Shown piece after piece: positions 26,261-51,702 of a stretch of DNA of 64,000 nucleotides. The stretch covers positions 66,402,001-66,466,000 of the forward strand of contig NC_086381.1 of the NCBI RefSeq assembly GCF_036588685.1. The letters are read 5' to 3'. Source of the DNA: Mytilus trossulus. Its lineage: Eukaryota. How positions within the stretch are numbered: position 1 is the stretch's first letter; each line of letters starts with the position of its first letter. A program made the translations under genes and the position numbers. The notes under the pieces were generated by a model. That model was not told where the DNA came from and searched no databases. It saw nothing but the letters and a program-made list of their open reading frames with translations.

Positions 26261-26354
26261 CTATTTTCCCTTATAAAATGTTGAACCGTCTTGTTTTCCC
26301 CAGCCATATGTTGGACGTTTTCTATATGAGCATTCTATGTTGTTCCAAGTTACT
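26261..26354 (-). CDS. Dermatopontin-like protein terminal exon (RVTWNNIECSYRKRPTYGWGKQDGSTFYKGK*)
   Basis: ttacag acceptor, phase 2; completes a DR.xW...C motif; TAG at 26263-26261. Confidence 0.7.
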
Positions 26355-26425
26355 CTGTAATATATTAAACGAAATTGTGAATAAGTATACAAATAAAGTA
26401 CAAAGTAAATTTAACAACTATATAC

Positions 26426-26500
26426 CTATCTGTTCTATCCTTAATTCTGGTCTGTTCACATTCTGTGCCATACTTTAGGTAGGCGATATAACTTTGGTTT
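26426..26500 (-). CDS. Dermatopontin-like protein exon 4 (GNQSYIAYLKYGTECEQTRIKDRTD)
   Basis: cacag acceptor, gtatat donor, phases 2/2, open. Confidence 0.65.
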
Positions 26501-27296
26501 CTGTGTTTGTATCATGACATGGAAGAAATGTACTCTTTTTATATCAAGGAATACAGAGATGCGATACTGGAAGGTGTCAATTGTTGATGCATTCCATTTG
26601 TTTGATGTTTTTGCGCGTTTGATTTTGGATATTGCTGAGGGATTTTTCGGTGTGAATTTTACTCGATAGTCAGTATTTGTGTGATTTTACTTTTTATATA
26701 TACAAGAGATACAATTATGCACTGGTAAAATATCAATGGTTCAATAACAAGTATCTTTCGAATATTTCTTTTTTGTATACTTGGTGTTTACTCATAAAAG
26801 TTAAAAAATTAAAATTTAGAGGTCAAAAATTTAATATGTGATAACTAAGAAATGTATGAATGAGTTATAATTTTGCAATGACATATATTTACGGATAATG
26901 AATGTCAATATATTATGTTTGAATGTATATTAACTGTTTTAGACCAAAAAAAATCAACCAATCAGTATTACACAGCACTGTTCGTTCAAATAAAGCAATA
27001 TAAAACGTTTAACATATATTATGAAAGTATGTCTGCAAAAATGTGTATGAATCTACTAGTTTTCTCGGCAATTTATCATCGCAACATTAGCAAATAGATA
27101 CAGCACCACCAGTATATAAAACTAGGAACTCCCAAGGTTTGTATTCAAACTTCACATAAAAATATAATATCACGAAAAAAATTGCCGTGGCGACATCTAG
27201 ATCAGGCTAAGCGGAAATACTCAATTAGATGAAAAGTTCTTTGCAAATTTGTATCTAGTTCAGTTATAAAACATGTAATGAAAAAAGTTTACAAAC

Positions 27297-27414
27297 CCGC
27301 CATCTTTACTGTTGAATCCAACGATAACCTTTCCTTTATTAATTCTATAGGTTCTCCCAAGTGATGTCGCGTCATCCAAATGTAAATCGCAGTCTCTGAA
27401 TGTGTACTCTATGT
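27297..27414 (-). CDS. Dermatopontin-like protein exon 3 (NIEYTFRDCDLH...GKVIVGFNSKDG)
   Basis: tttgcag acceptor, gtttgt donor, phases 1/2. Confidence 0.75.
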
Positions 27415-28008
27415 CTGCAAAAATTATTGCGTATCACTGCTTACATATCTGTTTGTTCATGTTAATATAGTAAGAGATATTTTTTAGCATTTTTGAACTG
27501 TTACTTAGATGCTAGAGGTGTTTCTTTTTTTTTGAAAATATGAAACTCATTAAATGTGAAATTATTATCTTCTTTTACTTTTGAAAGCGTGCGTTTGACT
27601 TCAATATTTATCTACTAAAATTGTCAGTTAATTTGCAGAAGGTCAGTGGTCCCATCCGTGCACTCCGGCTTCTCAACCAATATAAATTTACCGTGACAAA
27701 ATATCCACATATGGAGAAAGTGGCATAAAGCACAAATCAATCAATCAGTCAAGACTACATTTGAACATGTTAATGATCCGTGAGTTTCGTTCAATAATCA
27801 CATTGCTATGATTTACGAATTTGATACTTTTCGTTATCTTATTTGAGTGAAAGCCTTGATCATAGATCACTTTAAAAATGGCGGTAGATATCCAATGCTT
27901 TAAGATTTCGATAGTTTTTTTCAAAACATTTGTGCCAATTATACCAATAACGCATACATGATATACGTCATAATTTACTACACAGATGTCATGTTTGTAT
28001 ATACTTAC

Positions 28009-28113
28009 TTTTATCTTCACAACAGCGAACGTTTTCACCGAATCCTTCTAAATATTCCCATCCACTTACATAGCCATATCCAGGACATTTGAAAGAGTTT
28101 TTCAAATTATAAA
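28009..28113 (-). CDS. Dermatopontin-like protein exon 2 (FYNLKNSFKCPGYGYVSGWEYLEGFGENVRCCEDK)
   Basis: ccgtag acceptor, gtaagt donor, phases 1/1; F.CP..GY.SG...CC repeat pattern. Confidence 0.8.
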
Positions 28114-29682
28114 CTACGGAAATAAAAATTAGGTACATTTATGAAATTGATACAGAATGAAAATCCGGCAATTAAAAAGTGTTAAAAATGTGTTTGGTCC
28201 GTAAAACTTATTTTATTTCAATGATTTGTTTGTTTCTATACATGTAACGTCTGTGGTTATTTACGTTTCGTACTGATTATCACATTCATGTGTCATGTCA
28301 CCTTAGTTTTTTTGGTTATCTTGTTAGACAATTAGTCTGTCATTTTACACAAAAGAGCTGGTTCATTGTCTGATAATTTTGGTCCTAAAATTCAGATTTT
28401 TTTTCTCTACCAAAATTTGGTGAAAATTTGATGAGAACAAATGCTAAAATGTCTTATGGTTTCGCAGCTAAAAAAAGTGTTCACCATTGTCAATATTATT
28501 GATGTATTTTTGATTTCGGAAAATTGGGATTTTTTGCAGAATACTGCAATTTATTTAACAAGTATTTTTGTTGTAACATTCCTTATAGACCACTTTCTTC
28601 GTTTTCCATAAAAAAAAATGAGCTTCGGGTTTCGCTAAAAATTGAGGAAAATGAAGCAGAGATGCATCTGTTTTTGTATTGTACAAAACATTCATTCATC
28701 AATCAATGCGTATACATTAGATTTTGTTTGAAAATTAAAGTTTAAAAAACACCTTTTCATGACCGTTTATATTTGTTTCTGACTATACTCCTTAAATTTG
28801 ATCAAGCGGACAATTTAAATGCATATATGGTAAACCTGAAATTGATGAAGCACAAGAATGACTGGGAAGTAGAAATTTTGTCAATTTTGGTATTCGTTAG
28901 AGTGAACTTAACACCTTACTCAGCCTGGGTATTCGTTTAGAGAAAATGTAACGTCTCCTGCACATAAAGACTGTTGTACATGTAGCAACCCATCTAGGGG
29001 TACGTTGATGTCATTTTGTAGGTCTATATTTCTGTTTTAACCAATTACCAACTGTTGATAGTGGTTATCTTTATATTTTGCCCTTAATCCAAATAGACCC
29101 TTGAACAAGTCCAGCCTTATGTAAAAATTTATTTCAACCACTTATGAATCGGGACATATGCACTTAGCTGTAATATTGTCTTTTCATGTTTTCTCCCTAT
29201 TAGATTTTTTTAAGTTAAAGCATCTAATTTTTAGAGAAAAAGAATGTATAGAAAATACCAAAATAATAATTTAATCAACAAAGTTTGTACTTAAATCGAA
29301 AATCGACCGGGTCTTACAAAAACAGTTAAAAATGGCAGGTTTTACTAAGCATGTATCATTAAGGAGTAAGAGCAAAGACTAGTCTGCTCGAGATCAAAAT
29401 AAAATGACCCGGTGAGTTGCCATATCACCTGTGGAATGTTACATTGTAAACAAGCACGTTTAAAATGGAGATCAGCTAATCGGTTTTAAAACAAAGCATA
29501 TCCATTTTGCATTAATCTGTTCTCTTCCTGCCTGATTATGCATTTAATTGTGTTTTTTTTATACTATGTGAATTATAAAATCGCTAGTTTAATTTCACTT
29601 CCATGAAACTTCATCTGTCGTAAGTATGTTTAACGTTTATATTAGTGAGGATATATTTTATAAGTAGCTTAAATATACATAC

Positions 29683-29878
29683 AATGAGTTTTGCACACTA
29701 CGTTTCTTCCTGGTCCAGGTTTACACGTATATGGAAACGGATCAGGAAACATCTTATCAAGGGATTCGCCGTCTTTACAATACTGCCTATATGTTATTGG
29801 TCTTGATGTCTTTTCATAATTTTGGAAACCAAGGACATCGGAAGCAATAACAAATAATATGATCGTTGTTCCTTTCAT
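29683..29878 (-). CDS. Secreted dermatopontin-like protein, coding exon 1 (signal peptide MKGTTIILFVIASDVLG ... VVCKTH)
   Basis: tttttcag acceptor above 29903, ATG at 29878, T|gtatgt donor (phase 1). Confidence 0.8.
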
Positions 29879-30819
29879 TTTAACTTGGAGCACACGGAAA
29901 CGTCTGAAAAACAAAAATCAAATTAGTTGATAGGTTGGTAAAATAAAGAGGATTTATTTTTACTGTGAAATTTTAAAATATTTTTAAACTATATACATTA
30001 TGTTCTGTTTTGTTTGATGTTGGTTGTCATGTTTTCGTTTTTCGGTTTTTTATACATCATTGTCCATTTTGTTTTCGACTTATGTGTTTGAAAATCTCTT
30101 TTCGTCTAAATTCGCTCACACCGAACACCAAGCTATAAAGGACCCCAACAATTACTAGTAAAAAACCCATTCAAACGGGAAGTCAAAGGTCTAATGTATA
30201 CAGAAAACACGAGAAACGAGAAACATTTATATACCACATCATCAAAGGACAACTACATGTACTGAACATCAGGTTCTGGACTTAGGACAGTTGCAATTTT
30301 ACTAACCTTCTGCCGTGTATGAAACAATAGTGTAACATCACAACATAGAAAGACACACTATAAAATCTATATTATTGAACGAGAAAACCTCATTTTGTGT
30401 GTCGCTTCTCGTCCTTTCCCGATAAATTAATCAACATGCCACTGTGTTTTATAGGTAGCATGCATAGTCGCATTTGTCATCCATTCTTATGATTTTTAGA
30501 TTGAGTTATTTATGTTATTTTTGGAGAAAAACAAAAAAAAGGAATCCGGATTTTGATTCCGTAGTCAGTCACATATAAGACATATAAGACTCCGGGTTTG
30601 AAACATGTACAAATACAACCAATCGTATGATAGATAACAGAAAATAATTATATTTATAAGTACGTCTGAGTCAGTGACAACTCTACAACAGATTTATCCA
30701 TCGGATCACCAGCAGTGATGGTGATACATGGCTGTGTACATTATGTATATACAACTCGTCTAAACATCAACCCAACAATTTTAGACCTGTAAATTTGCTT
30801 TCGCAAATTTTTTGTTCTT

Positions 30820-30913
30820 CCCTCGCCGGGATTCGAACCCATGCTACTGCGATATCGTGACACAAAATCGCCTGCACTGTAGCCGTCCCGCTAGACCACA
30901 TGACCACCTAGGC
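30820..30913 (-). repeat. tRNA-like head (A box, B box GGTTCGAATCC) inside a ~360-bp repeat (30655-31015)
   Basis: Pol III boxes present with an extended spacer; no clean cloverleaf. Confidence 0.55.
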
Positions 30914-32270
30914 TTCATAAAAATGAAGCTTTTGCTGGCCATGTGTTACTTTTCCACGTCAGTTTTAATCTAGCGGCGTACTACAGTACATGATATATAA
31001 GGCATGGAGATGTTATATAAATAACAAGTCAAAAAGGGTACAACATCACCATTAAATAACTATAAAATGAACAAATATTAGATATTTCGGATAACAGAAA
31101 TCCTTCTTCAATAATAGCACGATGTCAAATGAATCATGTCAATATATCCAAACTGAGGAACTTTTTCCAAATCTTGTAATTTATACAATTTAGGCGAACA
31201 CCTCAGACGCTAGTACAATTTTAAAATTTCCGAACACGGCGCAAATATTTCAAAGATATGCCAAATAAAAATAAATAGTTATTTGCGATGCGAAATGGCG
31301 CAACTCTAAATTTCCAAAGGTTGTGACAGTTTATATGTTATAACTGCTTGGAGGGCAGTCCTCAAAAAAAAAAATCAAAAATGTCCTAAACGATCCAAGT
31401 TGGTATAATATTTCAAATTTGACAACGGTAGGTCAATTGCAACAAACACTGCATATTTAAGCCTCTCAAACGATTAGCAGTTTATAAATGATTAGAAAAA
31501 TAAGTTTTATCTGATGAGGTCACTTTCTAAAGTTGTTCCTCGCTCAGCTCACTGCTGATGACCTTTATTTTCGGCGGCATGTCCCAAACAGGAAGTTGTG
31601 TAAATGACTGTTTTTCCCGGATTGGACTAAATAGCGATAAACTTTAAGTGTATTATTGATGTCTAGGTTATTTGAGTTAGTCTATAGTCACCTTCGTGTG
31701 AAATTGGCACCGTGTTGTCGAAATATTTTTAATTGTCAGCCGCGTTAACTCGAGATAATGTTTTTGAATTAGTAGAATCAACCATTTTTCCAAAGACACT
31801 ACTGTCTTATAATTAAAAAGGAAGATGTGGTATGATTGCCAATGAGACATCTATCCACAAAAGACCAAAATGACACAAACATTAACAACTATAGGTCACC
31901 GTACGGCCTTCAACAATGAGCAAAGCCCATACCGCAAAGTCAGTTATAAAAAGCCCCGAAAAGACAATGTAAAACAATTCAAACGAAAAAACTAACGGCC
32001 TTATTTATGTAAAAATTAGCTTGTATTGTGTTTGCACTGTATAATCATGACCTTCACATTATCCTGTATGTCAATTTTACCTGTTGTCAATTTTAACCTT
32101 ACGGCGACTATAATTTAAAAAACCTGCAGATTTAAATGTTAAGTTTGACTATTATGGACTAATTAATTGAACTAAGATAAAGAAAAAATTCAAAGTTCTA
32201 TCATTTTATAAAACTTAAATCAAAAATATTACTTTTCTAGCATAAGAATAAAAGTTTTATAAGAATATAA

Positions 32271-33365
32271 GGCCGTGTTCACACCAAACGCCGTGTACAG
32301 TAAACATGTTTACATTTGGTTTAATGTAATGTACACTAGTTTCACAAAAAAAATGTTCACATCTATACACCTTGTTTAGTTACCTGTACATAAGATTTGT
32401 TCACACTTGCAAACTATATGTCATTTAAATGTTCATAACGTAGAACCAAATTTTCAAACAAACAACTTTACTTTTCTAGCTGTTAGGGAACGCCAATTAG
32501 ATTTATAAAGAAAACGGGGGATTGATGTTCCCTCAATTTGATCAAAACAAAAACCGGGTCATTCTGATGATTAGAATGGACAAAATCTTTTTAATATCCT
32601 GAACCCTCAGTTCCCCCTTACATTATAGTGTTGAATATTGAATTGGTATCGTTGAAAAAAAGTAAAATACAAACCTTCACGCGAGAAAAAATTAGAAAGT
32701 CATTTTGGATGATTTGCAGTAGTTTAAAGATGTCTCGATTACGCATTTAAAACGTAGGCTGCATTAGTGTGCTTACCGAAGAAGAAAAAAATTGCAATGT
32801 TAAGGATCAGTACATTTCTATATTTTCTGTTTGTTTCAAATGGTATTTTTTTCCCCAATGAGTATTTGGAAAGAAACGGTGACATATTTTTTTAAATTTC
32901 AAATTGTATTTTAACGGGTAAATAAGCAATTAAATTCACCCTTTTTCAGTAATGCATTTATGGGTGAATCGTTGTTTGAGTAAAAACCAGTGGCTAATAT
33001 TTCTGTCAGTGTGTACGTCCAATCAATTTGGGAAGATCTTTCAAACAAATTATGTGATCGGCAAAGATGAATGGGTTAATAAGGCTACGAAAAGTGCTTT
33101 TATAACAAATACATATATCAAGTTTAGACAAATATTTCGTAAAGAACTATATTAACAAGTGTTATAAGTATCAATTTTATATAAAAATCGTTTCTTCCTT
33201 AAATATTTATGGTAAAAATAATATTCTAAATGTCTAGTTTTGTGTACACTTAACCTACACAAGGCCTACATCGACTATCGACTGCATGTAGAAAAAAATT
33301 GATTTAAACTACATATAAACATTTTGTTTTATCAATGGGAACGTAATTATGTTTAATGTATGTGT
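32271..33365. mobile_element. PIF/Harbinger-like non-autonomous element, one end truncated
   Basis: TAA-ggccgtgttcacacc terminus; reverse-complement similarity to 48679-50118. Confidence 0.65.
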
Positions 33366-33640
33366 AAGTTTTAAAATAACGACTCAGCTTTCTATTTCAA
33401 CCACTAATTGCATGTAGCATCAGTACATACACTAAAAAAACGAAAGTATGCAAAAAGAAATTGTAAACACAATAAAGAAACTTAAGATTGGACAACATGT
33501 AATGAAAGCTTACGTAACGTTTCAACTAACGTTCATTGACAAATTGGATATTTTTGTTGTGAGTGTTTGAATATAAAAAAAACCCAACAAAAGCTGATCA
33601 GATGGATTTTCATTATGCCAGAGAATAAATGAACACTTAC

Positions 33641-33706
33641 CCCAATGTGTAATAGCAGACCTAATGCGAATAAGATAACTTTGTAAACGAAGTGGCTACT
33701 TATATA
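33641..33706 (-). promoter_or_regulatory. TATA box and short non-coding first exon, probably of the dermatopontin-like gene
   Basis: TATATAA at 33706-33700, Inr-like ttattc ~30 nt downstream, GG|gtaagt donor. Confidence 0.5.
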
Positions 33707-34683
33707 GCTCATACAATTAAAGTATTCAATCGAGGAATGCTGTAGGTGTGAAACAATAATCAGTGACATATGTTCTTCAGGTTTGTTCATTTTAAACATG
33801 TTAATGAATATGTAAAATGGGTTGGGTGTGCGACATCTTTCATCTTTTGTTAAACGAGTGGACTTTTACCTGTACTTGCAGATTATCAAACCATAATTTA
33901 AGGCAGTATTGAATTATGTATTACTTTAATATCTACAAAATGTGTTCACAATTGTTCCAAATGTTACGCTTTAATGGTTGTTGTTTAAAAAACCCATTTA
34001 ACTCCCTACATAATGTGATTGATTGATTGGTATTCAACGCCACTTTCAGCTGTATTTTGTTATTTTTTCACTGTCAACTATTTGCATTTGGTAGGGAAAG
34101 TGGTAATAATTCTAGTCAATTAGGTTGTGGTCAAGCGCATCTGGCACGTGAGGGATTCAAATTCACAACGTTAACTTCCATTTAGAAAGGTCAGTGAAGC
34201 AGTAGTTGCACAAGTAACCTCCTACCTTGCTAGATAAGGTTATCCTATAAGTAGCTGGAGTAATCTTATAAATTAATATAATGGTATATTTTTATGTGGA
34301 TTGAATTATAAAAAAAATACGAATATTTTATGTTACATTGAAAAATATTTAGTTGCACCACAGTATTTTTGTTGTTTCGTTGTTTTTGCTCCTATAATTA
34401 GCGTTTTTGTCTCGGTTTCGGTTTGTATCTCGGATTTTTTTCTGCATCAATCTATGACTTTATAACTGTTGCCATTGTGTAAGTTTATGATGCACAGGTA
34501 TTTCTTTCAACTTACATTCTTAAGGATATGATAATACACGTTTTACTATGTTCATTATATAGATATATCTATTTTGAGGGTCCTTTGTTTCTTGCTGTTC
34601 GGTGTGAGTTAAAGCTCTGTGACAAGACCGAACTTTGACCTATAATTGCTTTTACAACTTCTGACTTGGTTGGTATATAAGTC

Positions 34684-34843
34684 AGATAATGCCTATTATA
34701 AGGTTTTTCTTGTCGAAGAACACACCTCGGGTTGTCAGGATTGCTCAAAGAAAGACCTCCCTATGGTCGGTCTTCCATTTGATCAATCCTGACACCCCTC
34801 GATGTGTTCAACGACAAGAAAAACATTAAAATATGCATTATCT
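34684..34843. mobile_element. Palindromic (foldback) MITE
   Basis: Whole element is an imperfect inverted repeat, agataatgc...gcattatct; absent from the paralogous block. Confidence 0.75.
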
Positions 34844-35989
34844 ATAACGTAACTTCTTGATTAACATAATCATTTTGATTTCATCAGCAAAGTTTTACAT
34901 TCTCTTTCGACTATGGTAAATTTCTGTTTTCCTATCTTTAATGTTTAATCATATGCTTGGTTTGTTTTGTACTTCTTTGTTACATGTGTGTGTGGTTTTT
35001 TTTTCGTTAAGTGATTAGGATTATACCATTTTACCTAATATGTGTGATTGTTTTGTTCATGCATAGTTGTAAATATAACGGATTTTAATACGTGTCGTAT
35101 ACGTGGGAATTTAGCTAGCTATAAACCCAGGTACATTAGAAAATGTCTGTACCAAGTCAGGAATATGGTAGTTGGTATATATTCGTACGATGTGTTTGAT
35201 CTCTTAATTTTGTCTTTTGATTAGAAACTTCCCGTTTTGAGTTTTGATTTTTATGTTTTTTTTTCACGCTTATTAAGAGTAAATAGAATAAATGCATATC
35301 ATTTTTAAATGTAAAGTGTTGAGATATATTTTTTTATCAAATTGATTATGATTTTTTGTATGTTGCAATGGTAGCTAACGTTAAATAATATATAACAAAT
35401 ATAACAATTACAACATCAAAAAATGTCATAATTTGCATAATCAATTTAATTTCAAAAAAGAAAATCTAAATAGAATCAATGCATATTATTTATATATGTA
35501 AAGTGCAAATATATATTTGAAGTCAAACTGATTATGAATGCAAATGTTACAAAAATTGAATAATATACAACAGTTATTACAATTACAAAATCAAAACATG
35601 TCATAATTTGTCATAACTTCGTACTTTATTTGGTCTTTTTTTTTTTTTTTTTTTTTTTTTAACTTTTTTGGATTCGAGCGTCACTGATGAGTCTTTTGTA
35701 GACGAAACGCACGCATCGTGTATACATAAAACTTATTCCTGGTATCTATGATAAGTGTATTTGCATAATACATTTTATGAATAAAGAATATCCAAGTCTG
35801 CTATATACATGTATTATTGCTGCATACCTCGTCGTCATCATCATTAAAGTAATATAATTTAGTTTCACATGCGAGTATATAAAACGATATATAGTAGATA
35901 TAGGAAGATGTGGTGTGAGTGCCAATGAGACAACTCTCCATCCAAATAACAATTTAAAAATTAGTGTCTATTCTTTCTTAAGAGACTTT

Positions 35990-38900
35990 ACTTACATTTT
36001 CTAAACCTACTACAGTAACTTTTCATAATGAAAACCTGGACAAAACAGTTATTTGATATACTAGTACTTTATTATTCTGTTTCAGAAATTGTAGCCAACT
36101 TGTATCTCGAACGGAGCTTGTTATGATAGCCATGCGCGCATCAAATTTGCAAAATATTGGAGGTCTTTTTAAATAATCATACAGAAAATACTGCAATGCG
36201 AATTATGACATTTATTTTGTAATTTTACATGTTGTAACATCGGTTGTATATTGTACAACGTTTATAACAATGCAACATCAAGATTTCATAATCATGTTTA
36301 ACACCGCCGCATTTTCGCGCCTGTCCCAGGTCAGGAGCCTCTGGCCTTTATTAGTCTTGTACTACTTTAACTTTAAGTTCCTTGTGTATGATCTGGAGTT
36401 TAGCATGGCATTCATCATCACTCAACTAGTATATATTTTTGTTTAGGGATCAGCTAAAGGACGCCTCCGGGTGAGGGAATTTCTCGCTGCATTGAAGACC
36501 TATTGGTGACCTCCTGCTGTTGTCTGTTCTATTATATGAGTTAATTGAGATGTTAGGAATACGCAATAAACACTCAATTACTAATGTGTTAGTTTATTCT
36601 TCATTTACAAAAGTTTATGTTTCAATTTATAATTCGACAAGCATAGTTTTTGTTTAGCTATGAAAGAGACTAAACCATTGAAATTCATTCATTGGACAGT
36701 AAATATCGAGTTTTGCTGATGAGACTTGATGGATTTGGTGCATCTGAATCGCTTGACATACCGAAAGATTGACCCGATAGACCTTTGTGCAACACTAGTT
36801 ACAATATTTTTTTTATAGATAGATAGTTTCGGGATTGATCAATGTTATACTGAAAAGCTTTCAGATTAATTTCCTGTTTATACTGTTCCAAGCATTACAG
36901 AAAGATTACATTCAGCCAGAGGGAAACTACGTGTAAAAGTAATCTGAAACTTGAAGAAGTTGAAAAACGGATGTTTTTTTTAAAGTTAATTTTAATGTTT
37001 GAATAATTTCCCCTTAATTTTCACAAACATTTACTGGTATTAATTAGTTTCTTGCTTTACAATCCCACAAAGTACAATGATATATTTTTTCTGTGTAGTC
37101 TTGACATACTAGTCAAATTGATTATGCAAATTATGATCTTTTTTATGTTGCAATTGTAACATCTGTTATATATTATTCAACGCTCCTTAATCGTTTCCAT
37201 TCGTCACAACTCGGCTGATTCCGTAACATTGGATGAATGGAGAGCAGCGAATTCACCCGAGGATTAGCGATTGTAATCACGTCTTGATCATAATAATCTT
37301 TATGATTTCAACAGCAAGTTTTCTTATATTTCTTCAAAAGTTAAGAGCACAGTAAATAAATGAACATATATATAGTACAATGGTGTATCCTATAGCATAT
37401 TTAGTAGAAAGTTTGTAACTCAAGATGAGGCAGAAAAGGCATCTGTGTCGTCTGAATTGTTGGCAATACATAAAATAGATAAGAGAAAGGAAAAACATAG
37501 AAAAAGAGTGGCATGCAAGCGTGAAAACATCTTTGCATTTTAATACTATCAACAATTAAGTAACGCATAATTCGAATAGTAATAACTGTTTACGTCCAGA
37601 TTGTGTACTCTTATTTCAACAACGTTACAAATGTAACACAATCTTTGTCAATTTATTACGTAGATAACAATCGCCATATAGACGTTCATTACTATCGCAA
37701 GTAAACTGGCGTTTGGTTCTGCAATTATTTACGTCCATCGTTTATGGACAACGTAGGACAGGTAAACTGTCTTAATTGGGTAGACCTAAGTAATACCAAT
37801 GTTTTCCTCTCGTTTAGTTTTTCTTCAATTGACATCATTAAAAAGGTCGGGGTCCGTGCAACATCTCCCAAAGTCTTCAGGAAATTCACTGTTTTATTTT
37901 ATGTTTAGAGTATATTGAATACGACCAATTTTGGGATACCCTAAAACACTAGAAAACACTAGTAGGTAAAAATCATTGTGTGTTTTTGTACATGTTATTA
38001 TTTGAAATACCCCTGACTGTCAAATTGCATAGCGAGAACATATTTTAAAGTAAATCTGAAACTTCATGGTAATACAAATAGCCTGAATGTAAAGAAAAAC
38101 GGTTTTAAATTATTGATACGTCGGAAAGTCTGGCCAACTCAGATACCAATTTTTTTTTCAAACCTAGTCAGAAAAAAATACTGTCGTTAAATTCCTGCCT
38201 TAAATTTTAATAGTTATAAGTCTTTCTTATGTGACCATACTTACATTTTCTAAATCTACTACAGTAACTTTTCATAATAAAAACCTTAACAAAACAGTTA
38301 TTTGCTATACTAGTGCTTTATTATTCTGTTTCAGAAATTGTAGCCAACTTGTATCTCGAACGGAGCTTGTATTTGATAGCCATGCACACATCAAATTTGC
38401 AAAATATTGGAGGCCTTTTCAAATAATCATATAGAAAATACTGGAATGCAAATTATGACATTTATTTATGTTGTAAATGTACATGTTGTAACATCAGTTG
38501 TATATTATACAACGTTTATAACAATGCAACATCAAGATTTCAAAAAAGCATGTTTAACACCGCCGCATTTTCGCGCCTGTCCCAGGTCAGGAGCCTCTTG
38601 TCTTTATTAGTCTTGCAATACTTTTAATTTAAGTTGCTTCTTTATAATTTGGAGTTTAGTATGGCATTCATAATCACTGAACTAGTATATATATTTGTTT
38701 AGGGATCAGCTGAAGGACGCCTCCCGGTAAGGGAATTTCTCTCTGTATTGCAGACCTCCTGCTGTTGTCTGATCTGGTTGTAGTATATAAGTCAATTGAG
38801 ATGTTAGGAATACGCAAAAAGACAGTTATCAAACACGCAATTACTAGTGTGTTAGTTTTTTTTTCATTAACGAAAGTTTATGTTTTCAAATTACAATTTG

Positions 38901-39979
38901 AAAAGCGTATTTGTTTTAAGCTATTAAAGATACTTAACCATTGAAATTATTTCATTGGAAAATAAATATCGAGTTTGACTGATTATACTTGATGGATTTG
39001 GTGCATCTGAATCGCTTGCAGGTGCAAAATTAAATAGTTTAAAGGCTTGACATACCAAAAGATTGACCCGATAGACCTTTGTGCAACACTAGTTACAATA
39101 TTTTTTTTATAGATAGATAGATTCGGTATTGATTTCCAAGCAATACAGAAAGACTACATTTAGCCATGGAAACTACTTGTATAAGAGATCTATAACTTAA
39201 AGAGGTCAACAAATATTTTTTTTTTAGTTCATTACAATGTTTGAATAATTTCCCCTTAAGTTTCTCAAAAATTTGTTTGTATTTGTTAGTAACTTGCTTT
39301 ACAATCCCACAAAAATTTAAAGTACAATGATATATTTTTCTGTGTAGTCTTGACATACTAGTCAAATTGATTATGCAAATTATGATCTTTTTTATGTTGC
39401 AATTGTAACATCTGTTATATATTATTCAACGCTCCTTAATCATTTCCATTCGTCACAAATCGGCTGATTCCATAACATTGGATGAATGGAGAGCAGCGAA
39501 TTCACCCGAGGATTAGCGATTGTAATCACTTCTTGATCATAATAATCTTTATGATTTCAACAGCAAGTTTTCTTATATTTCTTCAAAAGAGCACAGAAAA
39601 TAAATGAATTGAAATATAGTACAATGGTATATCCTATAACATGTATAGTAGCAAGGTCGTAACTAAAGATGAGACAGAAAAGGCAACTGTGTCGTCTGAA
39701 TTGTTGGCAATACACAAAATAGATAAGAGAAAGGAAAAACATAGAAAAAGAGTGGCATGCAAGCGTGAAAACATCTTTGCATTTTAATACTATCAACAAT
39801 TAAGTAATGCATACTTCGAATAGTAATAACTGTTTACGTGCAGATTGTGTACTCTTATTTCAACAACGTTACAAAATTTAATGTATCGAAATCTGTCAAA
39901 TTATTACGTAGATTATAATCGTCATATGGACGTTCATTACTATCTCCAGTACACTGGCATTTGGTTCTGCAATTATTCA
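35990..39979 (+). repeat. Tandem duplication of ~1.74-kb units (35990-37730 and 38250-39979)
   Basis: Direct colinear similarity; duplicated ORFs 37334-37555 and 39557-39799. Confidence 0.92.
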
Positions 39980-39980
39980 T

Positions 39981-42125
39981 GTTCCGATCCATATTATGAC
40001 ATTTTTACTGACTGTAAAATTGTACCGTGGAAAGTGTATTCATATCAAAAAGACGCACACATTTTCAAAACATCCGGTATTACTTCTGGTTACGTTCCTG
40101 TGATTCCCTTTGTTTTTGGTTTAAAATATTGAAAACAACACGTATAATAATTTTATGCGTCCGACGCGTTTTTTGTCTGGATTAATCTTCATCAGGAACG
40201 CAAAAAACAAACATTTGAAATCCGAAGATGCATTAGTTTGTTTGTTTGTCTTCCTTATCGAATTATAATATCGGTTATGTACTGTTGCCTTTATTTGTGG
40301 TATCGTTATCGTTATATCGTCTTTTAACTGGTATTTAGTCTGCTGTACCTTTTGTATTTTGTTGTTTCTCTTGCGCACTCCCTTTATATCAGAAGTGATG
40401 ATTGTTATTTCTTAAAACAGTTTCATTCGCAGTTTTGCATCCTCTGAATAATTTAAGACTTCTTCTATTGACGAAAGTACTATAATTATTTTGACCTAGT
40501 TTTATCCATGTATCCCAAACATCTGAATTTAAAATCCTTCTGCGTTTTTCCTAAAAAGCAAAGTTTCTTTTAATTACACATACCTAACATTATTATCCTA
40601 AACAGTACAATAGTAGTTTTACTTGATTATATTAGAAGATAAAACTACCCGGTTCCAAAGGGAACATTCGTATAGTTAAAAACACCATTGTCTGCAGCAA
40701 ATACAAAATTTCCGTCTTGGTCAGGACTATTTGTACCACTATATACTTCATCCGCTAAAAGGAATTGACATGTAGTTTGTATCATTGGACTTGTAGAAAG
40801 ATTTTTAATCGTATTGAATCGTAAATATCAAAAAGAAAGATCTGGTATGATTGCGGATGAGAAAACAATACATAAGAGACCAACATGAAACATAAATTAT
40901 CAGCCCATATCGCATAGTCAGCTATAACAGGTTCGAAATGACAACCTTAAACAAGTCAAACGAGATAACCAACGACATAATTAATGAATGTACAAAACAT
41001 GAATGAAAAAAAACACGTAACACATAAACAAAAGACAACTGATGAATAACAGGTTTCTGACTTGAACAGTCACAAACAAAGTGAATGTGTTGGGGTTAAA
41101 CAGGTTATCATGATCCCCCTAACCTGAGACAGTGGTGTAATAGTGCAAAATATTAACGAACGATACGAGTCAGTTGAAAAAGCTTACAATGTAACTCATC
41201 AGTTCGATAAAAATAAAAAAAATCTACAAATACAAGTGGACGTGGCCATATATTTGTACATCCTAACATTACAAATATGGTAAGTACACATCTGAGATAA
41301 CTCGCCGTAACTGACAGCTGGTTCAAAGCCACTCACAACTAATGAAAAAGCATGCATATACGACTAAATTATCAATCAGTAAACATCCAACATTGAATTG
41401 ATTTAGTGTGAAGACGTCATAAACAGTCAGAGAAAAATGTGATATTGTGCAATGCCAAGAAACAGGTATTGACACATATCTATGAATGTCTATAATTATG
41501 TAGATAACAATACTATTTCATGTATTTAGTTTGCCTTTAATTTACTGATTTCAAAATCAATATTGATACAATTTAAAACAATATTCAGTGATCTAATAAC
41601 AGTCTTGAATTGGTAACCAAGGATAAGTTTATTTAAAGTTTACCAGGATTGTTTCTGAAACCAAATCTGTTTATCAGTGCATATTTTATTTGTAACTTAA
41701 GTTTGGGAAATACAATCCTTATATGTTGTTTTAGCACATTTTCGACACTTGTTAAGACTAACAATAATTAGGTAGGAATTACTTGCTTTCTACATCTTTA
41801 GTGCTTTAGGCTGGTAGTAAAATCAATAATTACAAAATCTATGTGTTTAGATACATGTCGTTCAACTGATTGATGTTAAGAAGTGAGTATTTTTTACATA
41901 GTTTCTAAGAACTAGTAAAACAAAATGTTTCGTCAATCAATAGACGCTGTTGCTATTAATTACAGCCCAGAAGTCAGCACTGTATGTGCTGACATGAATT
42001 ATCATTGATATGGTTATATCTATAAACTAACTGTTAACAAAATTTGGAGTTTACCTTAGCTGGATTTGGCGAAACCTTTATGAATTTTGGTCCTCAATGC
42101 TCTATAATTTCGTGCTTTATTTGCA
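39981..42125 (-). repeat. Inverted duplicate of C-type lectin intron/exon block 52110-54683
   Basis: Colinear reverse-complement similarity; lacks the HINE at 53306-53610. Confidence 0.9.
40650..40754 (-). pseudogene. Orphan duplicated C-type lectin exon (DEVYSGTNSPDQDGNFVF...VPFGT)
   Basis: Copy of 53853-53957 with W>Y and the donor GT shifted by 1 nt. Confidence 0.85.
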
Positions 42126-42139
42126 TGATATGGCCTAAT

Positions 42140-44623
42140 CAGTGACGCTCGAATCCAAAAAAGTAAAAAAAAAACAAATTAAGTACGAAGTTATGACAAA
42201 TTATGACATGTTTTGATGTTGTAATTGTTATAACTGTTGTATATTATTCAATGTTTGTAGCAATTGCATTCATAATCAGTTTGACTAAAAATATATCTTT
42301 GCACTTTACATATATAAATAATATGCATCGATTCTATTTAGATTTTCATTTTTAATCAAATTGATTAATATGCAAATTATGACATTTTTTGATGTTGTAA
42401 TTGTTATATTTGTTATATATTATTCAACGTTTGCAACCATTGCAACATAAAAAAATCATAATCAATTTGATAAAAAAAATTATATCTTTACACTTTACAT
42501 TTACAAATGATGTGCATTTATTCTGTTTACACTTTAAAAGCATGAAAAAAAATCACAACAATCAAAACTCAAAACGGGAAGTTTCTAATCAAATGACAAA
42601 GTTAAGAGATCAAACAAATCAAACGAATGGAGATCAACTATCATATTCCTGACTTGGTACAGGCATTTTCTAATGTACCTGGGTTTATAGCTAGCTAAAT
42701 TCCCACGTTTACGACACTTATTATATTCCGTTATATTGACAACTACTCATGAACAAAACAATCACACATGTTAGATAAATTAGTATAATCTTAATAACTA
42801 AACACATGTAACAAAGAAGTACAAAACAGACCAAGCATATAATTAAACATCAAAGATAAGAAAACAGAAATTTACCATAATCGAAAGAGAATGTAAAACT
42901 TTGCTGATGAAATCAAAATGATTATGTTGATCAAGAAGTTACTCAGAAAGATTGAATGCAATATTCAAATTGTAACATGTGCAACATATAGATGTACATT
43001 AATTGCATATCTTGCATAATCCGTTTGAAACACGAAGAAATTTGAATCATTGTTGCATGACTCATCGTTAACATTTAAGTATATAAATTAGCCTTAATTA
43101 ACTAAAATAACAAACATTTTGAAAAATATCAGAAGAAAACAGTATACCTTCAAATTAATTTCTGTAAACCAAACTAAAAATATCAGGAGAAACTGATTTA
43201 TTAATTAAATAATAGAAAGCTTAAAGTTTCTGGAAACTATTCTATATATTTATATCAGACATAATAATTGTATTGATAATAATTAGATATTAGAATTTGG
43301 TATATATGAGTGCCAAGGCGAATCTCCAACCAAGTCAGAAGTTGTAAAAGTAATTATAGGTCAAAGTTCGGTCTTGTCACAGAGCTTTAACTCTCACTGA
43401 ACAGCAAGAAACAAAGGACCCTCAAAATAGATATATCTATATAATGAACATAGTAAAACGTTTACCATCATATCGTTATGAATGTAAGTTGAAAGAAATA
43501 CATGTGTATCATAAACTTAAATAATGGCAACAGTTATAAAGTCAAAGATTGATGCAGAAAAAAAATCCGCGATACAAACCAAAACCGAGAGAAAAACGCT
43601 AATTATAGGAGCAAAAACAACGAAACAACAAAAATACTGTGATGCAACTAAATATTTTTCAACAAAATATTCGTATTTCTTTTTATTATTCAATCCACAT
43701 AAAATATACCATTATATTGATTTATAAGATTACTCTAGCTACTTATAGTATAATCTTATCTAACAAGGTAGGAGTCAACTTGTACAACTACTGCTTCACT
43801 GACCTTTCTAAATGGAAGTTAACGTTGTGAATTTTAATCCCTCACGTGCCAGATGCGCTCGACCAAAATCTTAATTGACTAGAATTATTGTCACTTTCCC
43901 TATCGAATGCAAATAGTTGACAGCGAAAAAATAACAAAATACATCTGAAAGTGGCGTTAAATACCAATCAATCAATCACATGTAGGGAGTTTAATGTTTT
44001 TTTAAACAACAACCATAAAAGCGTATCATTTGGAACAATTGTGAACACATTTTGTAGATATTAAAGTAATACATAATTCAATATTGCCTTAGATTATGTT
44101 TTGAAAATCTACAAGTACAGGTAAAAGTGCACATGTTTAACAAAAGATGAAAGATGTCGCACACCCAACCCATTTTACATATTCATTAAACATGTTAAAA
44201 TTGAACAAACCTAAATAGCATACGTCACTATTTATTGTTTCACACCTACAGCATTCCTCGCTTGCATACTTAATTGTATGAGCTATATAAGTAGCCACTT
44301 CGTTTACAAAGTTATCTTATTCGCATTAGGTCTGCTATTACACATTGGGGTAAGTGTTCATTTATTCTCTGGCATAATGAAAATCCATCTGATCAGCTTT
44401 TGTTGTTTTTTAAGATATTCAAACACTCAAAACAAAAATATCCAATTTGTCAATGAACGTTAGTTGAAACTTACGTAAGCTTTCATTACATGTTGTCCAA
44501 TCTTAAGTTTCTTTATTGTGTTTACAATTTCTTTTTGCATACTTTCATTTTTTTAGTGTATGTACTGATGCTACATGCAATTAGTGGTTGAACTAGAAAG
44601 CTGAGTCGTTAGTTTAAAACTTA
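42140..44623 (+). repeat. Inverted duplication block X' with TATA at 44284-44290 and donor at 44350
   Basis: Pairs with 33365-35700. Confidence 0.92.
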
Positions 44624-44859
44624 TCCTTAAACAACGAACCCTTCATGAAAAAGTCTCATACATTAGAATCAAATTACTCATATTGAATAAGTATTAGGTG
44701 TACGGAAAGTCAAATGCACATTTATACAAGATATAGTGCTGTAATTTGTATTTTGGAAACAATAAAACTGAGAAAAGAATTGGGGTATGATTCAAAAGAT
44801 AACCACCCGACCAAAGAGCAGTCAATAGCCGAAAGAGAAATACCTGAACGTACAAAATG

Positions 44860-44949
44860 TATAAAATGTCTACATATTCTGAACTAACTCCATTCTCAAG
44901 TATAAGTTTCATTGCTGAGACACCGAACTCGTCTGTTTGGTTTATGACG
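44860..44949 (+). promoter_or_regulatory. TATA box and non-coding first exon of the Cys-rich peptide gene
   Basis: TATAAAA at 44860, Inr-like ccattc at ~44890, G|gtgagt donor at 44950, acceptor tttcag ending at 45031. Confidence 0.6.
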
Positions 44950-45043
44950 GTGAGTTTGATTTGGTGTATTAGTATATTTAACGAGCTTGAAGATCATTGT
45001 CATAATCGATGTTTACAAATTTTCGTTTCAGTATTAAAGTATC

Positions 45044-45107
45044 ATGATGCAATTTTGTTGTTTGATTTTAATCCTTCTCTGTACAATTGGTGTTTCTACT
45101 GGCAGAA
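45044..45107 (+). CDS. Secreted Cys-rich peptide, signal-peptide exon (MMQFCCLILILLCTIGVSTGR)
   Basis: Typical signal peptide; A|gtaagt donor, phase 1. Confidence 0.8.
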
Positions 45108-45640: not shown

Positions 45641-45766
45641 GACTCACTAAAAATTGTGTTGCGTCAAATGGTACATGTGGCCGAAAAGGTGAAACTTGTG
45701 ATGATGCATTTGGTGAAGGATGGATCGAAAGAGGAAAATGTTGTTATGGAAAACCATGTTGTAAAT
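45641..45766 (+). CDS. Secreted Cys-rich peptide, core exon (RLTKNCVASNGTCGRKGETCDDAFGEGWIERGKCCYGKPCCK), beta-defensin-like spacing
   Basis: cctttag acceptor, gtaagt donor, phases 1/1; C-x6-C-x6-C-x13-CC-x4-CC. Confidence 0.85.
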
Positions 45767-47875
45767 GTAAGTAAACACATAAAGCATGATCAATAGTTCT
45801 TGTCCCTTCTATTAAAAAATGAAACATACAATGTAGGCACGTGTCTTAATAAAATATCATGTTGTAAATAGAATTAAACAATTTTATGCTGCAAGCAAAT
45901 TATATGATATATTGTTTTGATTATCTCAAGTGCAAAGAACACCATTGGAATCGAATAATATATGTGTTTTATTCCGATGGCAGTGAAATCTGAAATTTAA
46001 AACAAAAGACACATCAAATGCCCTGTTTTTACATTTCCCTTTATATTTTAAATTTAAAACACGATGTTTTTGTTGCGACAAGGTCTATGACATTGTTAAA
46101 TGTATTGTAACAGTTCCTGACATAGTTTATTGCAAACAATTGTAAGATATTCAGTTAGAAAATGAAATAAAAACTGTGTAATGCAAAGTTGACCTTATAC
46201 TGATTTGGCTTTAATTGGTATACCATTTTTGTAAGGGACAGAACCTTTGATGTCGACAAAATTATGGCCAATGTGAAAAACTGCTAAAATGATGGAAATC
46301 AAATATGTACATAAAAAACAATTAGATCTTTTGAATTAATTTTAAACCTCAGCAGTGTAAATAATTAATAACTGATTTCGTGTTGCTTGCCTGTTTATCT
46401 CATTAATTATTTATCGGGTTTACTACCCGCATTTGTTCTTTTTGTTTTCTTACATATTTTATTATTGTCCTTAAATTGAATTACATATTTGACACCATTT
46501 ATAAAATTATGTCAACAAAATATATCAAAACATTATTTAAACACAAGTTTCTCAAACAATGGCGATAATATACACTTGTTTGTACATTTTTATGAAAAAC
46601 AATGCCGATAATGAACGCACGTGTTTGTGAATTTAATTGGAGTCATCACTAAGGATACTTTAAAAGAATAACATCAAATTGTACACTCATATGCGGCAAA
46701 GGTGAGCGAAAAGTAATGCGACGTGATCAGTCAAACTAACTTTATTAGATAAACTCATAAAGGAACAATCGTTTTCATTTGTCAATTCAAACATTCGACC
46801 TCACACCTGCGAAAATAAAACACGTGTACTCTAAGTTAAACGGACTGGTCAGTATTCACGTAGCCGGTCAAGGTTGTTATAATTCATAATTTTGTGCAAT
46901 AGTAAAACTTTAAAACTTATAAGTAATATGTTTCACATCGAAATATTTAATTGTTCAACTGTTCACGTAGCCGGTCAAGGTTGTTATAACCTTCCATAGT
47001 AGTATTCACGTACGTGATTATGTTCTTGATTATTCCATAGCAATTCTAACTTTGATACATGTGCATGTAAAGTTCATTGAATTCATAATTTTGTGCAATA
47101 GTAAAATTTTAAAACTTATAAGTAACAGGTTTCACATCGAAATATTAAATTATTCAACTGTGTTCTCATTTGGTTCTGAATTAAGAGATCTACCATTTTT
47201 ATTTTTGGACGGGGGACTTAGATAAAACATGTTGTTCCTTTGTGAGTATTTATCTCTGTCCTGTCTTTTCATTTTTTGGTCTATATAGTCCTGCATTTTT
47301 TTGTCATCCGGTCTTTTTTTGCCAAGTTGTTCATCCTGCTTTTTCATATATTTCGTAAGTTTTAGGTATTCGACTAAAAAAAGTGATATTTTTTCTGATC
47401 CAGGAGATGGCAAACCATGGCACAGTGGAAGGAATATACTTTATAAACTCCAGCGATATACTTTATTAATTTTTATAATTAACCGTTTTGCTACTCTCGG
47501 TTTAAAAACGATCGTAACTTATATATTGTAAATATTTAAATAGTTACATAAAAAACAATCAATTTTTAAAAGCGTGTTTATTCATTTAATGTATTGATAA
47601 AAAGCGGGTGGGTCCCTTGTTGTCATGCATTCAGTCATCCTTATTTGTAGTTTCTTAATATTTCGATTCTCAGTTTATCTTACATGTATAATTTTGTCTT
47701 TTATTTTAAATACGCATGCATAATACACGTCACTTTTGGGGATAGTTCATCTATTTTTTCGGTATGAAATTAAAAAATAAGTTTTCAGCCAATTGAAATA
47801 AAAAAACGTACATTTACATTTTTTCTTATGAACTAGTCTACGATTATTCTTACAATTATATATTTATTATTTCAG

Positions 47876-48678: not shown

Positions 48679-50118
48679 GACCGTGTTCAACTTGAACTAA
48701 ATTCGGTGTTGTGTTAGTGTAACTTACACGTAAACTAATCACAATTGCGTTCCCATTGATAAAACTCAATGTTTACATGCAGTTTAAATCATGTTTTATC
48801 TACACACAGTCGATAGTCAATGTAGGCCTTTGTAGGGTTAAGTGTACACACAACTAGGCATTTAGGACATAGTTTTACGGTGTACATATTTAAGAAGGAT
48901 ACTATTTTTGAGTAAAATTGATATTTTTGATAATTATAAGTAAAGTTCTTTACACAAAATTGTTGTCTAAATTTTACTGATTTTTTTTTGTTAAAAAAAA
49001 TTAATGTACTTTATTTGATTCTGATCAAGACTCAAATCAGCATCATTGCCGAACCCATAAGACAGCAACCAATTGATTTTCAGGGGGAGGCTATTATAGT
49101 TGAGTATAAAACATAAAGGCAAGGGGTGGGTGTTGAGCTATGGATTTTGTTTTGGAAACAAAAATGTTTCCAGTATTTGGCCTTGAAAAAAAAATTGTTT
49201 GTTTCAACCTCAGCTGCCACTATATATAGTGCTAAAATTGATTTCGACTTCTCACCAAAATTTCTCCTGAAAACAATCAATAGCCCACGCACCCTTCCCG
49301 CTCCCTCTCCCCAAAAAATGAAAAAAATGCTGCCAAATTCATTTGAAAAGGTCTTCCCGAATCGACTTGACGTACACAGATATATTCGCCACTGGTCTTT
49401 ACTCAAACAACTATAAATGCATGACTAAAAAAGTGTGAGGTAAATGATATGTTTGTCTATCTCAGATCCGTTAAATATCATTTAAAATAAATATAAAAAC
49501 GTTACCCTATTCTTTTACCAAATACTCCTTTGAGAAGAAATACCATTTGAAACAAACAGAAAAGACAAAAATGTAGTGATCCCTAATATCGGCTGTAAGG
49601 ACGCTGCTGCAGCTAACGTTTTCTAATGCGTCATCGAGACATCTGTTGTATTAAAATGGCTTTCATAAAGTAGCAACCACTTAACTTAAAAAAGGGAGAT
49701 TTTTTATTTTTTTTTTATCTGAGTCAGATTATTTTCGCGCGTACGTTTTTATTCCTTTTTTTTCGATGCTGGTGATCAAATACTTTTTTTCAATATTTAA
49801 CACTATAATATCATCTGTATGACCATTTTTTTTTATCAAATTGTGGGATCGGAATATTTCCATTTCCATCCTCATCCCCCTTTTGAAGTCAAATGGTTGT
49901 TCCCTTACCGGTAGAAAAATTGTCCAAAAATTTTGAATTCAGTTCTACGTAATAAAAATTCAAATGACATATAGTTTACAAGTGGGAACAAATCTTATAT
50001 ACAGGTAGCTAAACAAGGTGTATAGATGGGAACAAATGTAATGTGAAACCTAGTGTACACTACACTAAACTAATTTTAAACATGTTTACTCTACACGGCG
50101 TTTGGTGTGAACACAGCC
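48679..50118. mobile_element. PIF/Harbinger-like non-autonomous element with TAA target duplication and nested small inserts
   Basis: TAA|gaccgtgttca ... tgaacacagcc|TAA. Confidence 0.7.
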
Positions 50119-51658: not shown

Positions 51659-51702
51659 ACGCCAGACACGCGTTTCGTCTACAAAAGACTCATCAGTGAC
51701 GG
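51659..51702 (-). ncRNA. Type I hammerhead ribozyme
   Basis: CCGTCA-CTGATGA-GTCT tttgt AGAC-GAAA-CGCGTG-TC-TGGCGT. Confidence 0.8.

What the first reader, a model, noticed from the sequence alone, without database searches (positions are those of the whole stretch)
33365..45107. Two unrelated, divergently transcribed secreted-protein genes share a duplicated promoter and first exon
Blocks 33365-35700 and 42140-44623 are inverted copies. Each has TATATAA, an Inr-like site and a ~30-nt exon ending GG|gtaagt. One points to the 5'-UTR acceptor of the dermatopontin-like gene (29903); the other lies ~680 bp upstream of the 5'-UTR acceptor of the Cys-rich peptide gene (45032), which also has its own TATA and exon. 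Both acceptors precede the ATG, so either splice would be productive. Inference: promoter capture that could co-regulate a matrix gene and a defence gene.
Basis: partly seen in the sequence, partly recalled or inferred. Interest (0 to 1): 0.78.

Follow-up and report, generated by a model that had tools for sequence, protein, structure and literature searches.

The report
Peptide-gene promoter module captured by neighbour
A 2.4-kb upstream block (promoter region plus untranslated first exon) that normally heads a large family of small cysteine-rich peptide genes in this mussel-like genome has an inverted second copy next door, and RNA shows that an unrelated secreted-protein gene now starts its message in that copy.

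Summary
Blocks 33365-35652 and 42157-44623 are inverted copies, with 2038 of 2250 aligned bases identical and 141 of 142 identical around the TATA motif, short exon and GTAAGT donor.

- **The block belongs to the peptide family.** 32 of 43 genome matches to the block have a same-strand peptide exon within 25 kb downstream. In the fetched peptide-gene loci the order is distal core, proximal core, signal exon, peptide exon.
- **The left gene is the recipient.** Its paralogs lack the block core.
- **RNA supports the left splice.** One spliced contig from one public run joins 33742-33641 to 29903-29683 to 28113-28009, with GT..AG ends. The predicted junction 33641>29903 is therefore real.

Three points are not supported or not shown.
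- The contig starts 36 nt upstream of the TATA motif, so the proposed start site and 30-nt exon are not confirmed.
- The right-hand junction 44349>45032 was never tested with RNA.
- "Dermatopontin-like" has no Pfam support.

Gaining a promoter or leader exon through partial duplication is a known kind of event. This is a clean new example, not a new mechanism.

The parts
33365..35652 (-). Left copy of the block, B(L): inverted duplicate of the peptide-family upstream region, with no peptide gene behind it
   Evidence: alignment to 42157-44623; no peptide exon elsewhere in the window
42157..44623 (+). Right copy of the block, B(R): native upstream region of the Cys-rich peptide gene
   Evidence: the same block-then-gene order in paralog loci L015-L018 and in the fetched peptide-gene loci
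33641..33742 (-). First exon of the left gene as seen in RNA (at least 102 nt). It contains TATATAAG at 33706-33699. The donor GTAAGT is at 33640-33635
   Evidence: X1 record 1 (positions 1-102, 3 differing letters); sequence
29904..33640 (-). Intron 1 of the left gene (3737 nt). It holds a dispersed repeat (about 32199-33370), a further repeat at 31810-32015 and a SINE-like element at 30637-31016
   Evidence: joint 29903/33641
29683..29903 (-). Exon 2 of the left gene: 5'UTR, ATG at 29878-29876, signal peptide and first Cys-containing part
   Evidence: X1 record 1 and X2 record 7
28009..28113 (-). Exon 3 of the left gene
   Evidence: joint 28113/29683 in X1 and X2
27263..27414 (-). The X1 contig has 147 more nt beyond exon 3
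   Evidence: reading frame, acceptor; contig length; paralog hits
32016..32271 (-). Island colinear with the upstream regions of two paralogs of the left gene. It has a TATA-like motif at 32261-32254 and GT sites near 32097 and 32080: a candidate ancestral core promoter and first exon, now intronic
   Evidence: inference only, no RNA
44284..44355 (+). Right copy core: TATATAAG at 44284-44291, predicted exon end at 44349, donor GTAAGT at 44350-44355. An upstream TTAAAAT lies at 44195-44201
   Evidence: conservation; use in RNA not tested
44860..44955 (+). Proximal TATAAAAT (44860-44867), proximal untranslated exon ending at 44949, donor GTGAGT. The TATA motif is present only in the R clade of paralogs
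   Evidence: alignment of 16 sequences
45032..45107 (+). Signal-peptide exon of the Cys-rich peptide gene (ATG at 45044, phase-1 donor)
   Evidence: conserved in all 16 aligned sequences
45641..45771 (+). Mature-peptide exon (8 Cys, ends CKCK then stop)
   Evidence: 123 genome matches; P0001 84% identical

Best explanation
The 2.4-kb block is the native 5' module of an expanded family of small secreted 8-cysteine peptide genes. It comprises the upstream region, an untranslated leader exon with a GTAAGT donor, and the start of intron 1.

At this locus there are two copies, head to head and about 10.5 kb apart at their cores. The right copy still heads its peptide gene. The left copy has no peptide gene. 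It abuts a dispersed repeat and, 3.7 kb further on, the conserved 5'UTR acceptor of an unrelated small secreted protein gene.

- **Shown:** transcription that includes the left copy's leader exon is spliced from its donor (33641) to that acceptor (29903). The unrelated gene's mRNA therefore carries a leader borrowed from the peptide family.
- **Inferred:** the left copy's promoter drives that transcript. The right copy's leader is used by the peptide gene, alongside a proximal promoter that only the R clade has. The left gene could capture the leader because its family already had an upstream untranslated exon and a strong acceptor.
For: **Inverted duplicate**
- 2038 of 2250 aligned bases match. 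The core is 141 of 142, with P about 4e-4 against well-aligned flanks at 7% mismatch.

**The block belongs to the peptide family**
- 32 of 43 genome matches to the block have a same-strand peptide exon within 25 kb downstream.
- The order distal core, proximal core, peptide exon is seen in fetched paralog loci on five contigs.
- The block runs straight into the peptide-gene segment in L015, L016, L017 and L018.
- The donor is GTRAGT in 14 of 16 peptide-linked cores, and the TATA-like motif is present in 12 of 16.
- 9 of the 15 aligned paralogs lack the proximal TATA, which leaves the distal core as their only TATA-type promoter.

**RNA**
- X1 contig record 1 (575 nt, depth 41.4) reads 33742-33641 | 29903-29683 | 28113-28009, plus 147 nt further.
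- Both joints have GT..AG ends on the minus strand.
- There are 5 differing letters in the 428 laid.
- The X2 contig stops being colinear with the genome at the same acceptor.

**The left gene's relatives lack the block**
- No match to 33570-33761 in 10-20 kb upstream of five paralogs.
- The stretch around the acceptor is nearly identical in two paralogs, so a spliced leader is ancestral in that family.
Against: - The splice is seen in one contig of one run whose RNA nature is only guessed. The three-exon GT..AG structure argues that it is RNA.
- Two raw-read RNA runs of another species label (X21, X24) have zero depth on the left gene's exons.
- The contig begins at 33742, 36 nt upstream of the TATA motif. 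The TATA-driven start is therefore not shown, and the true start may lie further upstream, for instance after the conserved TTTAAAAT at 33796-33789.
- The X2 contig has 17 unlaid nt before the acceptor, and these could come from a different first exon.
- A candidate ancestral TATA and exon island survives at 32271-32016. The block may therefore be an alternative first exon rather than the only one.
- No RNA was laid on the right-hand gene.
- High identity extends 270 nt into the intron (8 mismatches in 354). Recent gene conversion explains the core identity as well as selection does.
Confidence: 0.7

Rival explanations
1. Exon capture without promoter capture. The left gene's transcript starts upstream of the block's core, or elsewhere inside the block. 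The leader region then acts only as an exon with a good donor, and the TATATAAG motif lies inside the exon and is not the active promoter.
For: - The RNA contig reaches 33742, upstream of TATATAAG at 33706-33699.
- Conservation among paralogs is broad, 74-82% from 44110 to 44360, not peaked on the TATA motif.
- A second A/T box (TTAAAAT, R 44195-44201) is conserved in most copies.
Against: - X1 depth upstream of the contig is near zero: the 33721-33900 bin has mean 6.07, of which the contig itself gives about 5. The start is therefore still inside the block, within about 100 nt of the core.
- A contig end is not a mapped 5' end.
Confidence: 0.35
2. The left copy is a decaying remnant of a lost head-to-head peptide gene. 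Its use by the left gene is occasional splicing noise, and the gene's main promoter is the retained ancestral one near 32.2 kb.
For: - A head-to-head pair of complete peptide genes exists at C8:23.109-23.115 Mb.
- An island colinear with paralog upstream regions, with a TATA-like motif and GT sites, survives at 32271-32016.
- The X2 contig's 17 nt before the acceptor are unidentified.
Against: - The only first exon actually seen joined to exon 2 is the block's, in a contig of depth 41.4 that equals the depth of the coding exons.
- No joint from about 32.1 kb to 29903 is among the 15 joints shown, though 40 more were not shown.
- The left core is 141 of 142 identical to the right core while the flanks have drifted 7%.
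Confidence: 0.2
3. The block is a mobile element or gene-trap-like repeat with its own promoter and donor, unrelated to any host gene.
For: - 43 genome matches.
- Eight tandem copies of the core within 15.3 kb at C9:59.153-59.168 Mb.
- Orphan copies at C3:93.17 Mb and C9:0.738 Mb.
Against: - 32 of 43 matches sit in the same orientation upstream of a peptide exon.
- Copy number tracks the closest peptide paralogs, not the genome at large. A true dispersed repeat next door has 1851 first-look candidates.
- No terminal repeats or transposase frame were seen.
Confidence: 0.07

Closest known systems
Genes that adopt a foreign promoter or untranslated exons after incomplete segmental duplication, e.g. 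human HYDIN2 (PMC5345166, abstract read)
   Same: A partial duplication puts one gene's body under a promoter and 5' exons that are not its ancestral ones. Fusion transcripts span the breakpoint. Altered expression is expected.
   Different: In HYDIN2 the gene body moved and lost its promoter. Here the promoter and leader module of another family was duplicated in inverted orientation next to a resident gene. That gene seems to keep a remnant of its own core promoter, and only untranslated sequence is exchanged.
MgCRP-I genes of Mytilus galloprovincialis (PMC4558851; passages on gene structure and sequence features read)
   Same: A large, fast-diversifying family of short secreted Cys-rich peptides. 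The genes start with an exon holding part of the 5'UTR, followed by a signal-peptide exon that ends in a phase-1 intron.
   Different: MgCRP-I has six Cys in the array C-C-CC-C-C, a pro-region ending in a dibasic site, and four exons. The peptide here has eight Cys (C-x6-C-x6-C-x13-CC-x4-CC-x-C), no pro-region exon, and three exons plus an optional proximal leader.
Genes with tandemly duplicated alternative first exons, e.g. Drosophila hydra (PMC1904467; search listing and start of abstract only)
   Same: Repeated copies of a first-exon and promoter unit upstream of one coding body. This resembles the array of eight cores at C9:59.15 Mb and the distal plus proximal leaders here.
   Different: Use of the array copies is untested. 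Only 4 of 8 keep a GTRAGT donor.

Membership tests
Dermatopontin (Pfam DERM, PF14704), for the left gene | Match to the DERM profile | tested here: not met
   No DERM hit on the three exon frames at E<=10. A six-frame DERM scan of the whole genome gives 25 matches, none at C9:66.429-66.432 Mb or at the gene's paralogs at C9:68.08-68.18, C9:62.39, C12:23.56 or C2:102.16 Mb. The exons were searched singly, so sensitivity is reduced.
Promoter or leader-exon capture by partial duplication (chimeric transcription unit) | The 5' module is homologous to the 5' module of an unrelated gene and absent from the recipient's paralogs | tested here: met
   The block is family-wide upstream of peptide genes. 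It is absent from 10-20 kb upstream of five paralogs of the left gene.
Promoter or leader-exon capture by partial duplication (chimeric transcription unit) | A transcript joins the foreign first exon to the recipient's coding exons | tested here: met
   X1 contig: 33742-33641 | 29903-29683 | 28113-28009. This is one contig in one run.
Promoter or leader-exon capture by partial duplication (chimeric transcription unit) | Transcription starts at the captured promoter | tested here: inconclusive
   The contig's end at 33742 lies inside the block but upstream of the proposed TATA motif. Contigs cannot map a 5' end, and the raw-read runs had no coverage.
MgCRP-I peptide family, for the right gene | Six-Cys array C(X3-6)C(X1-7)CC(X3-4)C(X3-5)C, with a pro-region ending in KR or RR | tested here: not met
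   The mature exon reads C-x6-C-x6-C-x13-CC-x4-CC-x-C directly after the signal exon. The family definition comes from PMC4558851.
Only comparative support exists.

The most novel reading that the evidence does not exclude
The block is a portable promoter-plus-leader-exon cassette of a hyper-expanded secreted-peptide family, and it duplicates on its own. Evidence for this includes a tandem array of eight cores before one gene, head-to-head pairs, and orphan copies. Such a cassette could rewire unrelated secreted-protein genes into the peptide family's expression programme. The left gene here would be the first RNA-supported case, and both divergent genes would be co-regulated from near-identical cores.
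Probability: 0.25. Interest if true: 0.65.

Novelty: new member of a known kind. Interest (0 to 1): 0.45.

Why it matters
**What this case shows.** It shows, with transcript support, how a lineage-expanded effector-peptide family can donate its regulatory front end to an unrelated neighbour through a local inverted duplication. Only untranslated sequence changes hands, so expression can change without touching the protein.

**Practical uses.**
- Annotation of bivalve peptide genes: they have a distal untranslated leader 0.7-3.5 kb upstream that ORF-based tracks miss.
- A natural experiment: two promoters that match at 141 of 142 core positions drive different genes, which can be compared for expression.

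**Limits.** The mechanism itself, a new promoter gained by partial duplication, is well known.

Tried and rejected
**Readings rejected**
- I first read the weaker likeness L 32199-33400 / R 50183-48692 as part of the duplication, with the peptide gene deleted from the left copy between short repeats. I rejected this because that segment is a dispersed repeat: 1851 first-look candidates, with full-length copies at 74-79% identity on many contigs.
- I looked for a second copy of the left gene's coding exons to the right of the right block. There is none.

**Searches that led nowhere**
- Pfam on the exon frames of both genes: nothing useful.
- Word search with the peptide exon: one unnamed 60-aa ORF, 84% identical.
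- Rfam at gathering threshold on 29000-55000: no match.
- Rfam at E<=1 on 30400-31300: one chance-level hit.
- I thought the element at 30637-31016 was a retrozyme. No hammerhead motif is there, and it contains a tRNA-like stretch instead.
- One orphan block copy (L044) has no peptide gene within 4.3 kb downstream and no obvious gene.
- Two word look-ups in earlier findings gave nothing on this question.

- I did not run the large representative search, or a second word search to name the left protein. Its family does not decide the finding.
- Spliced protein models were never joined. Exons were searched one at a time.
- Supplementary files of papers were not opened. Those of PMC4558851 may list peptide families that bear on naming the right-hand peptide.
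Full report
**1. Observation**

The window is G000:C9:66402001-66466000 of a 1.30-Gb genome. An earlier unchecked note of this scan calls it a mussel.

Repeat search and self-BLAST confirm that 33365-35652 and 42157-44623 are inverted copies. A global alignment has 2038 matches, 212 mismatches and 272 gap columns. The middle of the block differs between the copies (L 34674-34848, R 42943-43325).

Both copies carry TATATAAG and, about 58 nt later...CACATTGGG|GTAAGT. The right gene also has a proximal TATAAAAT at 44860-44867 and a GTGAGT donor at 44950.

Around the core (R 44270-44411) the copies match at 141 of 142 positions. Well-aligned flanks mismatch at 7%, giving binomial P about 4e-4. Identity stays high for another 210 nt of intron: 8 mismatches in 354 overall, P about 6e-5. 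Either selection or a recent conversion tract could explain this.

**2. The block is not a two-copy feature**

A 481-nt probe over the core finds 43 places in the genome. The mature-peptide exon of the right gene finds 123 places.

I compared the 43 block matches with a typed subset of 40 of those peptide-exon matches: the top of the list plus a few near block hits. Of the 43, 32 have a same-strand peptide exon within 25 kb downstream. The 11 without one are:
- the left copy here;
- six short matches on C13 that cover only the first ~130 nt of the probe;
- four others.

In four paralog loci the whole block runs straight into the peptide-gene segment (L015, L016, L017, L018). In the fetched peptide-gene loci the order is distal core, proximal core, peptide exon.

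Among 16 peptide-linked cores, 14 keep a GTRAGT donor and 12 keep the TATA-like motif. In the alignment of R with 15 paralogs, the proximal TATA motif is present only in the clade of the right gene (R, L015, L016, L017, L018, L037). The other nine paralogs lack it. The signal-exon acceptor is conserved in all 16 sequences.

The block is therefore the native front end of this peptide family. The right-hand arrangement is the family norm and not a capture.

**3. What lies beyond the block on the left**

The weaker likeness between L 32199-33400 and R 50183-48692 first suggested a larger duplication with the peptide gene deleted from the left copy. It is in fact a dispersed repeat, with 1851 first-look candidates and full-length copies at 74-79% identity on many contigs. 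The duplication is the block alone, and its gene-side end coincides with the end of that repeat.

**4. The left gene and its relatives**

The left gene has about nine relatives in the genome. Four lie at C9:68.08-68.18 Mb. None of the five upstream regions I fetched (10-20 kb each) matches the block core.

Two close paralogs are colinear with the left gene's intron 1 up to 32271. They share an island (32271-32016 and 31809-~31650) with a TATA-like motif at 32261-32254 and GT sites near 32097 and 32080. This is a candidate ancestral core promoter and first exon, but that reading is inference only.

The ~70 nt around the 29903 acceptor are almost identical in those two paralogs. An upstream untranslated exon is therefore ancestral in this family, which would make the gene easy to hook to any upstream donor.

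The four C9:68 Mb paralogs have an extra intron inside the signal peptide that the left gene lacks.

No Pfam family matches the exon frames. A DERM-profile scan of the genome finds 25 matches, none at this gene or its paralogs. The label "dermatopontin-like" is not supported. Exon-by-exon searching is less sensitive than a search with the full protein.

**5. RNA**

The look-up of sequencing runs on 26200-34000 listed 24 runs. I laid four on 27950-33900: X1 and X2 (contigs, RNA only guessed, organism A) and X21 and X24 (raw RNA reads, organism B).

- **X1.** Record 1 (575 nt, depth 41.4) maps as 33742-33641, 29903-29683 and 28113-28009, plus 147 nt beyond the stretch. Joint 29903/33641 skips 3737 nt with CT..AC ends, and joint 28113/29683 skips 1569 nt with CT..AC ends. 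Both are GT..AG on the minus strand. Five letters differ in the 428 laid, which fits another individual's allele.
- **X2.** Record 7 shows the exon 2 to exon 3 joint.
- **X21 and X24.** Both have zero depth on the exons.

Two cautions apply. The contig reaches 33742, which is 36 nt upstream of TATATAAG. The exon seen is thus at least 102 nt long, not ~30 nt, and the proposed start site is not confirmed. A second conserved A/T box (L 33796-33789, R 44195-44201) would fit a start near 33760, but a contig end is not a mapped 5' end.

**6. Mechanism**

- **Shown:** the duplication; the block's membership of the peptide family; its absence from the left gene's paralogs; the splice 33641>29903.
- **Inferred:**
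  - The left block's promoter starts that transcript.
  - The right block's leader is spliced to 45032, alone or through the proximal exon.
  - The locus began as a head-to-head pair of peptide genes, like the pair at C8:23.109-23.115 Mb, and the left gene body was then lost at a repeat-bounded breakpoint.
  - The two genes are co-regulated.

**7. Comparison and novelty**

Adoption of a foreign promoter and untranslated exons after incomplete duplication is established. HYDIN2 is an example (PMC5345166, abstract read).

Mussel MgCRP-I genes also begin with a 5'UTR exon followed by a signal exon with a phase-1 intron (PMC4558851, passages read). The peptide here does not meet that family's six-Cys array or its pro-region.

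I found no paper on this peptide family or this locus. My two literature searches were not designed to prove absence. I rate this a new member of a known kind.

**8. Verdict**

- Observation: confirmed.
- Interpretation: partly supported. Capture by the left gene has RNA support. Shared use by the right gene, the start site, the protein labels and co-regulation remain open.

Noticed in passing
L013/L014 = G000:C9:59150001-59170000: Eight same-strand copies of the block core lie within about 15.3 kb, 1.1-3.3 kb apart, upstream of one peptide paralog (peptide exon at C9:59173096). Six of 8 keep the TATA-like motif and 4 of 8 keep a GTRAGT donor. This may be an array of alternative leader exons, or a decaying tandem duplication.
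   Followed up: partly
L034 = G000:C8:23108501-23116500: A complete head-to-head pair of peptide genes, each with its own distal core, with the cores about 1 kb apart. This is a plausible model for the ancestral state of the window's locus.
   Followed up: partly
window 30637-31016: A SINE-like element with a tRNA-like stretch lies in intron 1 of the left gene. Run X21 shows 950 reads with a 'goes back 380' joint (31016>30637), almost all with the first mate on the plus strand, plus hundreds of loose ends at both borders. The RNA is either circular or from tandem copies elsewhere. No hammerhead motif and no Rfam match.
   Followed up: partly
window 35684-35707 (+); 51673-51696 and 52035-52058 (-): An identical hammerhead-core-like motif (CTGATGAG...CGAAA) occurs at all three places. 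The unit at 35656-35765 abuts the outer end of the left block, and the right block keeps only about 20 nt of it (42139-42157). Rfam at gathering threshold reports nothing in 29000-55000.
   Followed up: partly
window 39980-42052 and 52205-54685: A second inverted pair (89-94% identical) brackets the right block, the peptide gene and about 6 kb more. It is repeat-rich, and I did not check whether it allows inversion of the segment.
   Followed up: no
window 35972-37734 and 38221-39982: A tandem duplication of a ~2.25-kb unit (83-97% identical in pieces) lies between the two blocks. Part of it resembles the block's distal sub-repeat (36210-36291 and 38458-38529 vs 42197-42268).
   Followed up: no
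window 29860/29861 vs L019-L022: The left gene lacks an intron that splits the signal peptide in four paralogs at C9:68.08-68.18 Mb. A more distant paralog on C12 matches across the site, so this could be intron gain in that cluster or loss here.
   Followed up: partly
window 34684-34843: A palindromic ~160-nt insert (arms 66 nt, 85% complementary) is present only in the left block. A similar element lies upstream of a paralog of the left gene (92% over 181 nt). It looks like a MITE.
   Followed up: no
window 32199-33370 and 48692-50183: Two copies of a dispersed ~1.1-1.5-kb repeat (1851 first-look candidates in the genome). The left one marks the gene-side end of the left block.
   Followed up: yes
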